From positions 186,001 to 250,000 of IMG/VR virus record IMGVR_UViG_3300023174_000033: a DNA stretch of 64,000 nucleotides; one strand, given 5' to 3'. Positions 35,298 to 53,437 of this stretch are shown one piece after another. Under the pieces are notes generated by a model. The model ran no database searches. It worked only from the letters and a program-made list of their open reading frames with translations, and had not been told where the DNA came from. The position numbers and the translations under genes are program-made. The stretch's first letter is position 1, and the number at the start of each line of letters is the position of its first letter.

Positions 35298-36071
35298 TTA
35301 TGACTTCTGCCAGATTTTTTCTAAATTTAGATTGGTCTTAACATCTATAAGATTATTATTAAATTTGAGCTGATATCCAATCATTCCAATAAACGAATTA
35401 ATAATTGATTTGATTTTGTTTTTTTCATGATCGTCAATATCAAAATTAAAAATAGTAATAAGATTTTCAATCTCGGAGAATGTTAAAGTGTTTTTTACCC
35501 CTAGGAAAAAAAGGAAGTCATAGGAATAATTGGTGAAACTTTCCGAATCTTCTTTATTTGATTTTGAAAGCAAGAACTGTGATAAGCAGTTTTCCACACC
35601 AACCGATGGCATTGAAAATTTATAACCTTCAATTTCAAAAACCCTTTCTTCTTCATTATAAAGTTTTTTTAAATTTTCAAAATTGAAATAGTTAAAGTTA
35701 TTTGAGGAAAATTCAATAAAATCAATTTTACTCATTTCATCATTGAAAAACTCAATCTGTATTTGTCTATTTGTAGTAAATTTTACAATTTCTAAAAATA
35801 TAAAAATTATATCAACACTTTTTAAATCTTCAAAATTGTAAGAATTACTAAATATAGTATTCTTTTGTACTATATTTTTCACACACTCAACAATTTCCAT
35901 TAAATTATCAGAGTCATATTTCAACTCATATTCAATGATATCTTCATCTTTTGCTTTCTTAATCTTTATAAGAAAGTCTTTGGGATAGAAATATCCTTTC
36001 GTTGGTAAAGAATTTACTTCTAAACCTTTGGAACCATCAATAAGATTTCTGATTAGAGAAATTAAACTCAT
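35298..36071 (-). CDS. Baseplate hub assembly protein, T4 gp26-like (putative)
   Basis: LP(T/S)KG.FYP N-terminal motif and L...D...IFL.I segment. Promoter at 36078..36085. Confidence 0.5.
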   Translation of the reverse strand: MSLISLIRNLIDGSKGLEVNSLPTKGYFYPKDFLIKIKKAKDEDIIEYELKYDSDNLMEIVECVKNIVQKNTIFSNSYNFEDLKSVDIIFIFLEIVKFTTNRQIQIEFFNDEMSKIDFIEFSSNNFNYFNFENLKKLYNEEERVFEIEGYKFSMPSVGVENCLSQFLLSKSNKEDSESFTNYSYDFLFFLGVKNTLTFSEIENLITIFNFDIDDHEKNKIKSIINSFIGMIGYQLKFNNNLIDVKTNLNLEKIWQKS

Positions 36072-36134
36072 TCAAAATATATATTTTTTAAAAATATAAT
36101 ATTTTATATCAAATAATTAATAAATGTTTAAATG

Positions 36135-36196
36135 TGGGAGTAGATGGACTCGAACCACCGGTATCAATTCTGCAATAGCCACTATGCGATACTCCC
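36135..36196 (-). ncRNA. tRNA-like RNA lacking the anticodon arm (62 nt)
   Basis: Perfect 7-bp acceptor stem GGGAGUA/UACUCCC plus A73, D arm GCAUAGUGGCUAUUGC, canonical T arm GGUGG-UUCGAGU-CCAUC, but only 12 nt (AGAAUUGAUACC) between the D and T arms. Confidence 0.75.
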
Positions 36197-36202
36197 AGTT
36201 TT

Positions 36203-36412
36203 CCCCACAATGAGATTACTTGTGAGTAGTTAATTCGGTTTTCTTTCTTTCAATAAACCTGTGGGGCATCCCCCGTGAAATTAGTCAAACTACTTGGAGC
36301 CTCTGTTACCTAGCTTTATCCCAACGAGACTGGCGTTTAAGGATGTCCAGTCCAATACCCTACCCATTGTTTAAGTCTTGGATTAAAGACTCTGAGTATC
36401 TCTTACTCATTG
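36203..36412 (-). ncRNA. Structured ~210-nt RNA with predicted pseudoknots in the tRNA array
   Basis: GC-enriched, no ORF, at least seven complementary pairs, two of them crossing (see findings). Confidence 0.55.
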
Positions 36413-36483
36413 TTATCCGACAAGGATTCGAACCTCAACTAACTCCGTCAAAGGGAGGTGTGCTACCGCTACACTATCGGACA
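36413..36483 (-). tRNA. tRNA-Gln(UUG)
   Basis: Cloverleaf: acceptor UGUCCGA/UCGGAUA, D arm GUGU-AGCGGUA-GCAC, anticodon loop CU-UUG-AC, T arm UGAGG-UUCGAAU-CCUUG. CCA is not encoded. Confidence 0.92.
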
Positions 36484-36489
36484 ATTTAG

Positions 36490-36558
36490 TGGAGCGTCAT
36501 CTTTCGATTATCCACTTCTGTTACGTTACCCGAAGATAAGAGGCTTTACAGAGCTCCA
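36490..36558 (-). ncRNA. Small (69 nt) structured RNA between two tRNAs
   Basis: Terminal helix UGGAGC/GCUCCA, internal UCUGU/ACAGA, a cUUCGg hairpin and a GAAA-tetraloop hairpin. Confidence 0.5.
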
Positions 36559-36562
36559 TTTG

Positions 36563-36634
36563 TAGTCCCACGGGTAGTCGAAACCCGATTGCCAGGATGA
36601 AAACCTGGATTCCTAACCATTAGAAGATGGGACC
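36563..36634 (-). tRNA. tRNA-Glu(UUC)
   Basis: Acceptor GGUCCCA/UGGGACU, anticodon arm CCAGG-UU-UUC-AU-CCUGG, T arm CGGGU-UUCGACU-ACCCG. CCA is not encoded. Confidence 0.93.
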
Positions 36635-36638
36635 ATGT

Positions 36639-36676
36639 GTAACTTTTTTTATGTCAGTGGGTAAGTTACCAACCCA
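36639..36676 (-). ncRNA. H-type pseudoknot 4 nt upstream of tRNA-Glu (the RNA may extend to ~36750)
   Basis: S1 UGGGU/ACCCA, S2 GUAACUU/AAGUUAC, L1 2 nt, L2 0 nt, A-rich L3 12 nt. Confidence 0.45.
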
Positions 36677-36753
36677 TCCTACTTACGATTAGGCTCCCAA
36701 CTTGAGATTTCTCACAGAGGTTAGAGGAACTACGATCCTGCCGCGGACAGACT

Positions 36754-36948
36754 CTACGGTCTTTCTTGTTCTGTGTAATGGTCCAATTGGTCCTCATTAA
36801 AAATATGAAGAAGACCATAATCATCCATTTCAGCAACTACTCTCACATTACCACCAACAGTTTTAAAAACTGAAACTATTGTACAAGGAAATTTATATCC
36901 TTTTGGTTTGTGAGCTTTATCTCCCACTTGAAATTTTGTTTCATTCAT
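36754..36948 (-). CDS. Small hypothetical protein (KOW/SH3-like)
   Basis: 64 aa with KFQVGD..K..GYKF motif, heading the tRNA array. Confidence 0.6.
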   Translation of the reverse strand: MNETKFQVGDKAHKPKGYKFPCTIVSVFKTVGGNVRVVAEMDDYGLLHIFNEDQLDHYTEQERP

Positions 36949-53081: not shown

Positions 53082-53086
53082 ATTTG

Positions 53087-53437
53087 TGGAGATGCGGGGC
53101 TCCGACTCCCCGGTCTTCCTCGACTAGACCTAAAATATCCTTCACAGACTTAGTCAAGTTTTTCTAAACTGACAAAATATTCAATTTGATTTTACGATTC
53201 TAACTGACAGATAACATCGTGAGTTTTACAGACTCAATACTGTTGAAAACAATTAAGCTACAGAAGCTACCTCGTTTGTCTTGAGGATGTTGTTTTGTAG
53301 GGCAAATACTAATTCTTCTTTGCTAGCTACTTCGTTTGTGTTGCCATTTACAGCTTTGATACCTTATTTAATTGGTCGATATCACCCAATGCCTGCTATT
53401 TTAACCCTACGACGCGAATCAATTCCATTTCATCCCC
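53087..53437 (-). ncRNA. ssrA: Transfer-messenger RNA (351 nt)
   Basis: 5' GGGGAUGAAAUGGAAUUGA; 3' GAC-CGGGG-loop-CCCCG-CAUCUCC-A. Acceptor stem has the G3:U70 alanine identity pair and A73. Internal tag ORF 53345..53253. Promoter at 53450..53457 and a terminator directly downstream. Confidence 0.9.
53253..53345 (-). other. tmRNA tag reading frame (A)GNTNEVASKEELVFALQNNILKTNEVASVA*
   Basis: Resume codon GGC after GUAAAU, inferred by analogy with Bacteroidota tags that begin with Gly. 30 codons to UAA. Confidence 0.7.

What the first reader, a model, noticed from the sequence alone, without database searches (positions are those of the whole stretch)
36203..36412. ~210-nt multi-pseudoknot RNA starting exactly at the 3' end of tRNA-Gln
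Seen, complementary pairs: 36208-14/36406-12 (closing), 36393-98/36404-09, 36374-79/36386-91, 36328-33/36347-52 whose loop (36341-45) matches 36267-71, and the crossing helices 36203-09/36260-66 and 36225-31/36288-94. The region is GC-rich relative to the genome and has no ORF. Inference: a discrete ncRNA released by processing of the flanking tRNAs. Its size and tRNA-array context recall the manA RNA motif, but I cannot confirm that match. It is much longer than tRNA-associated theta ribozymes.
Basis: partly seen in the sequence, partly recalled or inferred. Interest (0 to 1): 0.62.

Follow-up and report, generated by a model that had tools for sequence, protein, structure and literature searches.

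The report
Triple-pseudoknot RNA in phage tRNA arrays
A ~212-base stretch between tRNA genes of a 465-kb lake phage belongs to an unannotated, phage-only family of intricately folded RNAs with three pseudoknots; host tRNA-processing enzymes probably cut it out, and its job is unknown.

Summary
The RNA lies on the minus strand at 36412-36201. It starts directly after the discriminator base of tRNA-Gln. It ends 4 nt before a tRNA-Tyr derivative that has lost its anticodon arm.

On its own the sequence is not special: the folding z-score is -0.5 and complementary 6/7-mers are at chance level. Two short patterns from it, however, retrieved over 100 IMG/VR phage contigs. A covariance model found 88 full-length copies, one per locus (73 unique, 39-99% identical).

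Covariation supports eight hairpins or helices and three pseudoknots: 90.5% of cells are paired, and 44 of 54 pairs show compensatory changes. A kissing contact between the 5' and 3' terminal loops is likely.

Its closing helix, loop-loop contact and two crossing helices are not.

No Rfam family matches, including manA, GOLLD, ROOL, HDV-like ribozymes and tmRNA. The two patterns found nothing in 185,579 prokaryotic genomes, and BLAST found nothing in GenBank phages. Ten related megaphages lack the RNA.

The spacing to the flanking tRNAs is nearly invariant. This argues that RNase Z and RNase P release the RNA. Function is unknown, and no transcript ends were seen.

The parts
36562..36634 (-). 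tRNA-Glu(UUC), first gene of the cluster
   Evidence: ARAGORN; Rfam tRNA 51.9 bits
36484..36561 (-). ~70-nt structured unit between tRNA-Glu and tRNA-Gln. It has an acceptor-like stem UGGAGC/GCUCCA and no T arm. It is a neighbour in the same array, not part of the 212-nt RNA.
   Evidence: An 85%-identical homologue at L283:13291-13362(-) shows compensatory changes. It shares an AUCGAAAGAU hairpin with an 87-nt tRNA-like gene of related megaphages.
36413..36483 (-). tRNA-Gln(UUG). Its discriminator base (36413) is model position 1 of the RNA family.
   Evidence: Rfam tRNA 56.1 bits; ARAGORN
36201..36412 (-). The structured RNA itself, 212 nt. The unpaired tail AAACU continues to 36198.
   Evidence: Covariance model R1 scores 228 bits, E 1.6e-56, model positions 1-216. 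It is the only copy in the 464.6-kb genome.
36394..36408 (-). P1, the 5' terminal hairpin (GAGUA / UACUC). Its loop AAGAGAU is the 5' partner of the kissing contact.
   Evidence: 97.8-98.1% of cells paired; 4 of 5 pairs show compensatory changes
36374..36391 (-). P2 hairpin (AGUCUU / AAGACU). Its loop 36380-36383 pairs with 36362-36365 to form pseudoknot PK1.
   Evidence: P2 is 96-97% paired. All 5 PK1 pairs show compensatory changes, e.g. AU 36 / GC 12 / GU 7, on an alignment not fitted to structure. PK1 pairs are among the top mutual-information pairs.
36327..36360 (-). PK3 plus P3. Bases 36357-36360 pair with the P3 loop at 36341-36344. The P3 stem is 36347-36353 / 36327-36333. P3 is the variable, insertion-tolerant arm.
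   Evidence: All 7 P3 pairs covary. The first PK3 pair is GC 24 / CG 17 / AU 3 on A1 and GC 30 / CG 26 / AU 7 on A2. Insertions of 50-100 nt occur in L244, L253, L221, L225 and L364.
36288..36324 (-). P4 (36321-36324 / 36294-36297) encloses hairpin P5 (36312-36315 / 36298-36301). The P5 loop 36305-36307 pairs with 36288-36290 to form pseudoknot PK2.
   Evidence: A P4 pair holds the top mutual-information score: GC 30 / UA 18 / AU 14 / CG 5. P5 and PK2 pairs covary, e.g. CG 55 / UA 9.
36263..36274 (-). P7 hairpin GGGG[GAUG]CCCC
   Evidence: All 4 pairs show compensatory changes (GC to AU or UA)
36237..36259 (-). P8, an A/U-rich hairpin with a purine-rich loop
   Evidence: 97.9-98.7% paired, mostly invariant, 2 pairs with compensatory changes
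36204..36226 (-). P9, the 3' terminal hairpin (CUCACAA / UUGUGGG). Its loop GUAAUCUCA is the 3' partner of the kissing contact (36212-36215 with 36399-36402).
   Evidence: 95.5% paired, 5 of 7 pairs compensatory, including a triple change in L208. The kissing contact is paired in 56 of 56 sequences with 13 wobble-compatible one-sided changes. There is one compensatory U-A to C-G change, in L360.
36135..36197 (-). tRNA-Tyr derivative without anticodon and variable arms. It keeps acceptor, D and T arms. It is the likely RNase P handle that would define the RNA's 3' end.
   Evidence: Rfam tRNA 39 bits, with 6 nt in place of the 17-nt anticodon arm. It aligns with tRNA-Tyr of relative L177:1502-1582. 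In run X4 an intact tRNA-Tyr(GUA) stands at the same place (loose end at 36171).

Best explanation
The stretch is one member of a phage-specific family of ~210-225-nt non-coding RNAs that no annotation known to me describes. These RNAs sit inside tRNA gene arrays.

Fold, shown by covariation:
- Terminal hairpins P1 and P9, whose loops probably kiss and close the molecule in place of a terminal helix.
- Hairpin P2, whose loop pairs downstream (PK1).
- Directly after PK1, a strand that pairs into the loop of the variable hairpin P3 (PK3).
- A P4-P5 stack whose loop pairs downstream (PK2).
- Two further hairpins, P7 and P8.
- Many invariant unpaired bases.

Biogenesis, inferred from anatomy: the RNA is transcribed with the tRNAs on the minus strand. 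RNase Z (or an equivalent activity) cutting after the discriminator of the upstream tRNA would free its 5' end. RNase P cutting at the 5' end of the downstream tRNA or tRNA-like element would free its 3' end. A compact stable RNA then acts in trans.

Action, which is speculation: the most likely role is binding or sequestering a host or phage factor linked to tRNA or translation, for example as a decoy against a tRNA-directed defence. No partner was identified.

The unit behaves as a cassette that moves between phage tRNA arrays.
For: Shown:
- Family size. Pattern scans found the element's sequence in 21 and 115 IMG/VR stretches. Model R1 finds 88 full-length copies, one per locus, among 91 matches. 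After removing identical rows, 73 unique sequences remain, 39-99.5% identical (median 65%) and 208-273 nt long. Six more divergent members turned up in another set of loci.
- Structure. On a MAFFT alignment not fitted to any structure, 87.3% of cells are paired, against 77.4% in shuffles and 34-51% when partners are slid. 36 of 50 pairs show compensatory changes, and the covariation score is 0.293 against 0.130 (0 of 500 shuffles reach it). With all three pseudoknots on the model alignment: 90.5% paired, 44 of 54 pairs compensatory, score 0.332 against 0.119.
- An independent mutual-information scan recovers P3, P4, P5, P7, P9, PK1 and PK3 among its top pairs.
- Strand. Conserved G-U pairs (for example U189-G209 in 75 of 76 sequences) would be A-C mismatches on the other strand.
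- tRNA punctuation. In 26 of 28 cases with an ARAGORN-called upstream tRNA, the tRNA ends at exactly the same model position as in the window. In 33 of 33 cases a downstream tRNA starts 3-6 nt after the model end. Neighbouring tRNA identities vary.
- Where no normal tRNA flanks it, a non-canonical tRNA-like element with acceptor and T arms usually does. The window's own anticodon-less tRNA-Tyr is one example.
- Cassette behaviour. There is one copy in this genome and none in ten related megaphage records, six of them at least 91% complete. A copy differing by only 4 substitutions and 2 indels lies between different flanks in another lake metagenome.
- No terminator or above-chance promoter lies inside the cluster.
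Against: - No transcript ends or abundance were measured. The one metatranscriptome contig carrying a family member is short and shallow, and coding DNA from the same phage region appears in that library too, so it does not show expression.
- No partner protein was found. The commonest neighbouring protein family occurs in only 14 of 79 loci.
- The function is not supported by any test.
- About a quarter of upstream flanks and a seventh of downstream flanks showed no tRNA-like signature in a crude check.
- The kissing contact rests on invariant bases plus one compensatory change.
- The family may already be listed, unnamed, among about 8,500 IMG/VR candidate RNAs of PMC10690425. That paper's tables were not available.
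Confidence: 0.7

Rival explanations
1. It is a cis-acting self-cleaving or processing ribozyme. It would cut at its own 5' edge to mature the 3' end of the upstream tRNA, as HDV-like theta ribozymes are proposed to do.
For: It starts with zero spacer after the discriminator base in 26 of 28 cases. The unpaired first bases CAAU are conserved, with A4 invariant in 56 sequences. Its size and its many invariant unpaired bases fit a catalytic core.
Against: No Rfam ribozyme family matches. RNase Z and RNase P already explain release. Conservation extends over all 212 nt and across the 3' junction, more than cleaving one site should need.
Confidence: 0.12
2. It is an RNA-only assembly unit. The complementary loops of P1 and P9 would pair between molecules, not within one, building multimers as the tRNA-island RNAs ROOL and GOLLD do.
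For: The loop-loop complementarity is kept in 56 of 56 sequences and through one compensatory change. The genomic context matches that of ROOL and GOLLD, which form cages (PMC12286853). No protein partner was found.
Against: Nothing distinguishes intermolecular from intramolecular pairing. The RNA is 3-4 times smaller than ROOL or GOLLD and shares no homology with them.
Confidence: 0.1
3. It is a cis-acting structured spacer that insulates or times processing and decay of the tRNA precursor. Under this reading it has no life of its own.
For: It always sits inside arrays, on the tRNA strand, at fixed spacing.
Against: A block to nucleases needs no 212-nt fold with three pseudoknots and dozens of invariant unpaired bases. 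Most phage tRNA arrays, including those of the close relatives, do without it.
Confidence: 0.06
4. It is decayed tRNA genes or chance complementarity in a degenerating array, with no function.
For: This genome's array is degenerate. It has only 7 tRNAs, an anticodon-less tRNA-Tyr and a T-arm-less unit beside the element. The single-sequence statistics are at chance.
Against: There are 88 full-length homologues in other phages with strong compensatory covariation. No tRNA-model match falls within the element.
Confidence: 0.01

Closest known systems
Phage T4 species 1 and species 2 stable RNAs (rnaC, rnaD)
   Same: They are small stable RNAs of unknown function encoded inside a phage tRNA cluster. 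They directly abut a tRNA gene: in the T4 record, tRNA-Arg, rnaD and rnaC are separated by 1-6 nt. From my own knowledge, they are co-transcribed and processed with the tRNAs.
   Different: They are shorter (139 and 119 nt). There is no homology: model R1 scores -0.8 bits on rnaC and gives no match on rnaD, even with filters off. I know of no triple-pseudoknot fold described for them.
GOLLD and ROOL RNAs (Rfam families)
   Same: They are ornate, pseudoknotted RNAs of phages and prophages, typically next to tRNA islands. Their function is unknown and no protein partner is known (PMC12286853, PMC5737381).
   Different: They are about 580-800+ nt against 212 nt. No Rfam hit to either falls on the element. 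They also occur in bacterial genomes as prophages, whereas the two patterns from this family found nothing in 185,579 genomes.
manA RNA motif (RF01745)
   Different: No match at E<=10 in the window or E<=5 in ten members. From memory, manA has two tandem three-stem junctions, which does not resemble the fold found here.
HDV-like theta ribozymes (PMC10879173)
   Same: They sit immediately 3' of phage tRNAs.
   Different: They are a several-fold smaller nested double pseudoknot (from memory) whose P1 starts at +1. Here a +1 helix is not conserved, and no HDV-family hit appears.
freshwater-1 RNA (RF02979)
   Same: It is a small RNA known only from freshwater metagenomes. One copy (71 bits, gathering score 72) lies 27 nt upstream of a family member at L241:295-356.
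   Different: It is a 62-nt unrelated motif. It is a neighbour in the array, not a homologue.

Membership tests
manA RNA motif (RF01745) | Match to the Rfam covariance model at or near its gathering score | tested here: not met
   No manA match at E<=10 in 36000-36900, or at E<=5 in ten other family members
HDV-like / theta ribozymes | Nested double pseudoknot whose P1 helix begins at the first nucleotide after the cleavage site | tested here: not met
   The only helix that starts at +1 (36406-12 with 36208-14) is unpaired at two positions in 46 and 51 of 56 homologues and shows no covariation. No HDV-family Rfam hit.
HDV-like / theta ribozymes | Self-cleavage at the 5' edge | not testable with these tools
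   Needs an in vitro cleavage assay
GOLLD / ROOL | Match to the Rfam models | tested here: not met
   No hit at the gathering threshold in the window, or at E<=10 or E<=5 on the element
T4 rnaC / rnaD | Sequence and structure homology | tested here: not met
   R1 against the T4 tRNA cluster with filters off: -0.8 bits over rnaC and no match on rnaD. The best hit, 13.5 bits, lies inside segB.
T4 rnaC / rnaD | Encoded within a tRNA cluster, directly abutting tRNA genes on the same strand | tested here: met
   Window. Family-wide spacing. T4 layout.
tRNA / tRNA pseudogene | Match to the tRNA model within 36201-36412 | tested here: not met
   tRNA matches fall only at 36413-36483, 36563-36634 and 36135-36196
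Group I intron in a tRNA gene | Interrupts a tRNA (usually in the anticodon loop) and matches the intron model | tested here: not met
   Both flanks are complete tRNAs or tRNA-likes with their own acceptor strands. No group I Rfam hit.
tmRNA | Match to RF00023; tRNA-like domain plus tag reading frame | tested here: not met
   The genome's tmRNA is elsewhere, at 53084-53437. No tmRNA hit on the element.
The family defined here (model R1) | Full-length match to R1, with P1-P9 and PK1-PK3 able to form | tested here: met
   228 bits, model positions 1-216. Every listed pair except one PK1 end pair (A-A) is a standard pair in the window sequence. The window was itself part of the seed alignment.

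The most novel reading that the evidence does not exclude
It is a new class of large functional RNA. It could be a ribozyme or an RNA-only machine that acts on tRNAs or on the non-canonical tRNA-like scaffolds that often flank it. Alternatively it could self-assemble through its conserved complementary terminal loops. On this reading, freshwater phages spread it between their tRNA arrays as a mobile cassette.
Probability: 0.15. Interest if true: 0.85.

Novelty: new variant of a known kind. Interest (0 to 1): 0.62.

Why it matters
Structured RNAs over 200 nt with several pseudoknots and many invariant unpaired bases are rare. Those whose function has been worked out have mostly proved to be ribozymes, ligand sensors or ribonucleoprotein cores.

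This one is abundant in uncultivated freshwater phages: more than 100 contigs were found with two exact patterns alone. It is missing from Rfam 15, from GenBank phages (by BLAST) and from prokaryotic genomes (by the two patterns).

It adds a third, much smaller and more tractable example to an old puzzle. Phages keep elaborate stable RNAs inside their tRNA clusters, such as T4 species 1 and 2, GOLLD and ROOL, and nobody knows why.

The exact abutment to tRNAs, with degenerate tRNA-like elements kept as neighbours, also suggests that tRNA folds are retained purely as processing handles.

At 212 nt, with a well-defined covariation model, it suits chemical probing, cryo-EM and cleavage assays.

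Tried and rejected
- Single-sequence folding on either strand gave z-scores near zero. This was uninformative.
- BLASTN of the 701-nt cluster against 50,697 GenBank phage records matched only the tRNA parts.
- Synteny. The two flanking ORFs and the nearby ribonucleotide reductase led to about 35 related megaphage contigs. None has tRNAs at that position. BLAST of 15 related records, and the covariance model on 10 of them, found no copy.
- An exact 23-mer from the tRNA-Gln 3' half found nothing in IMG/VR.
- The two element patterns found nothing in 185,579 prokaryotic genomes.
- Neighbouring proteins. Clustering ORFs within 6 kb in 79 loci gave no common partner. The top clusters are an RNase H-like protein (14 loci), an HNH endonuclease and a weak sigma-70 region-2 match.
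- I tested whether the RNA is coupled to the Leu-type tRNA-like scaffolds with variable middles that often flank it. Only 6 of 78 further scaffold loci hold the RNA nearby, so there is no tight link.
- T4 rnaC and rnaD show no homology.
- Literature. Three full-text searches and four papers turned up no description. The supplementary tables of the IMG/VR candidate-RNA catalogue were not available.
- I considered and dropped several chance resemblances seen by eye, without running a dedicated test for any of them: RNase P conserved regions, the SRP Alu UGUAAU motif, the 23S GTPase-centre sequence, the T-box AGAGA bulge, and a short reading frame from the conserved AUG (the frame is not kept between subtypes).
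- The metatranscriptome contig (run X20) cannot show expression, because coding DNA of the same phage region is in that library too.
The large protein searches were not used.

Full report
**Where the window is.** The window is bases 186001-250000 of a 464,605-bp IMG/VR virus record estimated 98% complete. It is a megaphage from lake water with about 32% GC. It carries a tmRNA and only seven ARAGORN tRNAs.

**Layout of the cluster.** The finding lies in a non-coding gap (36072-36753) with no ORF of 60 aa or more. All RNA genes there are on the minus strand. In transcription order they are:
- tRNA-Glu, 36634-36562
- a 78-nt structured unit, 36561-36484
- tRNA-Gln, 36483-36413
- the element, 36412-36201
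- a 5-nt tail
- a 62-nt tRNA-like gene, 36197-36135. It scores 39 bits on the tRNA model but has 6 nt where the 17-nt anticodon arm should be.

**The observation itself.** As one sequence it is unremarkable. The MFE z-score is -0.52 or -0.72 depending on strand. Complementary 6-mers number 11 against 5.9 +/- 3.5 expected, and 7-mers 3 against 1.5. Rfam 15 has no family for it at the gathering threshold or at E<=10.

**Finding relatives.** GenBank phages matched only the tRNAs. Flanking proteins and the nearby ribonucleotide reductase led to about 35 related megaphage contigs (72-87% reductase identity). These have no tRNAs at that position. Their tRNA arrays elsewhere have tRNA-Glu directly followed by tRNA-Tyr. 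The window's anticodon-less tRNA-like is clearly derived from that tRNA-Tyr.

The breakthrough came from laying contigs of other lake metagenomes on the region. Diverged copies of the element (88-98% identical) appear with other flanks. One variant has a different upstream tRNA and an intact tRNA-Tyr(GUA) downstream. The block 36326-36364 was the best conserved.

An exact 21-mer from that block hit 21 IMG/VR contigs. A degenerate 3' pattern hit 115 stretches. Neither hit any of 185,579 prokaryotic species genomes.

**The family.** The first alignment already showed a ~215-nt conserved unit bounded on both sides by tRNA sequence. I aligned 56 members below 97% identity with MAFFT (A1). I then built covariance model R1 and searched all fetched loci. 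This gave 91 matches, 88 of them full length, one per locus. The window scored highest, at 228 bits. After removing identical rows, 73 unique sequences remain. They are 39-99.5% identical (median 65%) and 208-273 nt long.

Six more divergent members (63-170 bits) turned up in an unrelated set of loci. The window's own genome has exactly one copy. Ten related megaphage records, six of them at least 91% complete, have none. Ten members scanned against Rfam at E<=5 show nothing on the element.

**Structure.** RNA position i equals 36414 minus the window coordinate. Covariation supports:
- P1, 6-10/16-20
- P2, 23-28/35-40
- PK1, 30-34/49-53
- PK3, 54-57/70-73
- P3, 61-67/81-87
- P4, 90-93/117-120
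- P5, 99-102/113-116
- PK2, 107-109/124-126
- P7, 140-143/148-151
- P8, 155-159/173-177
- P9, 188-194/204-210

On the structure-blind MAFFT alignment (without PK3), 87.3% of cells pair, against 77.4% in shuffles and 34-51% when partners are slid. 36 of 50 pairs carry compensatory changes. The covariation score is 0.293 against 0.130, and 0 of 500 shuffles reach it.

On the model-based alignment with all three pseudoknots, which the model does not fit, the figures are 90.5% paired, 44 of 54 pairs compensatory, and 0.332 against 0.119. An independent mutual-information scan puts pairs from P3, P4, P5, P7, P9, PK1 and PK3 at the top. Conserved G-U pairs fix the strand as that of the tRNAs.

**The terminal loops.** The loops of P1 (AAGAGAU) and P9 (AAUCUCA) are complementary in 56 of 56 sequences, with 13 one-sided changes that all keep a wobble pair. 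In the divergent member L360, U16-A198 becomes C-G. So a kissing contact that closes the molecule is likely but rests on thin variation.

**The variable arm.** P3 is the variable arm and tolerates 50-100-nt insertions.

The other four do not:
- The 'closing' helix fails at two positions in 46 and 51 of 56 sequences, and it competes with P1.
- The loop-loop contact 36341-45/36267-71 is no better than shuffles. That P3 loop pairs instead with 36357-60 (PK3).
- The crossing helix 36203-09/36260-66 is at shuffle level. Its 3' strand belongs to P9.
- In 36225-31/36288-94 only three to five invariant pairs exist, which says nothing either way.

**Relation to tRNAs.** Among 69 unique members, 28 have an ARAGORN-called tRNA upstream. 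In 26 of those the tRNA ends at the same model position as in the window. 33 have a called tRNA downstream, and all start 3-6 nt (mode 5) after the model end. The neighbouring tRNAs are of many kinds: Asp, Gln, Thr, Tyr, Leu and Met upstream; Pro, Ser, Arg and Gly downstream.

About 40% of flanks are tRNA-like elements that ARAGORN does not accept. Many are a Leu-type scaffold with constant acceptor, D and T arms and a middle of very variable length. No terminator and no above-chance promoter lie inside the window's cluster.

This anatomy is what one expects if RNase Z (upstream) and RNase P (downstream) release the RNA. That step is inferred, not observed. The only RNA-library contig with a family member is uninformative.

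**Mobility.** Three facts indicate transfer as a cassette between phage tRNA arrays: presence in this phage but not its relatives, near-identical copies between different flanks, and 92% identity to copies in unrelated contigs.

**Function.** No neighbouring protein is shared by more than 14 of 79 loci. The Leu-type scaffolds are not specifically linked to it, since only 6 of 78 further scaffold loci hold the RNA nearby. I therefore commit only to this: a stable trans-acting structured RNA, matured by tRNA punctuation. Binding of a tRNA- or translation-related factor is the most likely but untested mode of action. A self-cleaving ribozyme, an RNA-only multimer and a cis-acting spacer are the rivals.

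**Comparison with known RNAs.** The closest analogue in context is the pair of T4 stable RNAs rnaC and rnaD, which abut tRNA-Arg in the same way but are not homologous. GOLLD and ROOL share the tRNA-island, phage and unknown-function context, but they are far larger and unrelated.

I found no description in the searchable literature. An unnamed entry in the IMG/VR candidate catalogue cannot be excluded.

**Verdict.** This is a real, conserved, triple-pseudoknot phage RNA family absent from Rfam 15. Its detailed fold is mostly wrong, and the manA link is wrong.

Noticed in passing
window 36135-36197 (-): A tRNA-Tyr gene that has lost its anticodon and variable arms but keeps acceptor, D and T arms. 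A near-identical population in another lake metagenome has the intact tRNA-Tyr(GUA) at the same place. No independent contig confirmed the deletion in this assembly.
   Followed up: partly
window 36484-36561 (-); L283:13291-13362 (-): A ~70-nt structured unit between tRNA-Glu and tRNA-Gln, with an acceptor-like stem, two hairpins and no T arm. An 85%-identical copy with compensatory changes lies in another phage's array about 90 nt from that phage's copy of the 212-nt RNA. It may be a second small array RNA or a conserved tRNA relic.
   Followed up: partly
window 36635-36753 (-): A GC-rich non-coding stretch upstream of tRNA-Glu. It has no Rfam hit, no folding signal and no homologue in the fetched loci. 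It is about 95% conserved in another lake metagenome.
   Followed up: partly
L265:603-709, L278:397-499 and 1767-1886, L287:1115-1235 and 1694-1791, and loci L321-L398: Leu-type tRNA-like scaffolds: constant AGTCAGGTGGCGGAA... 5' part and ...CAGGTTCGAATCCTGTCCTGACTA 3' part, with a middle of very variable length. There are 86 unique units of 54-181 nt, and ARAGORN accepts only 19 as tRNAs. They occur in more than 120 IMG/VR contigs, often several per array. What the variable middles encode is unexplained.
   Followed up: partly
L241:295-356 (-): A freshwater-1 RNA (RF02979, 71 bits against a gathering score of 72) lies 27 nt upstream of that locus's copy of the 212-nt RNA. Several orphan freshwater RNA motifs may therefore share phage tRNA arrays.
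   Followed up: no
window 53084-53437 (-): The megaphage encodes a one-piece tmRNA (Rfam 58 bits) that ARAGORN missed.
   Followed up: no
whole genome G000; L177, L178, L183, L190: This 465-kb phage has only 7 tRNAs. Related megaphages carry dense arrays of 7-10 tRNAs per 3 kb. Those arrays include tRNAs with D-loop insertions, an 87-nt tRNA-Glu-like gene, and a repeated unit consisting of a glycine-rich mini-ORF followed by a hairpin-plus-U-tract that looks like a terminator.
   Followed up: no
L244:3324-3590, L253:924-1190, L221:863-1130, L225:2542-2814, L364:7861-8124: Some family members carry 50-100-nt insertions in the P3 loop, so P3 is a peripheral, expandable arm.
   Followed up: no
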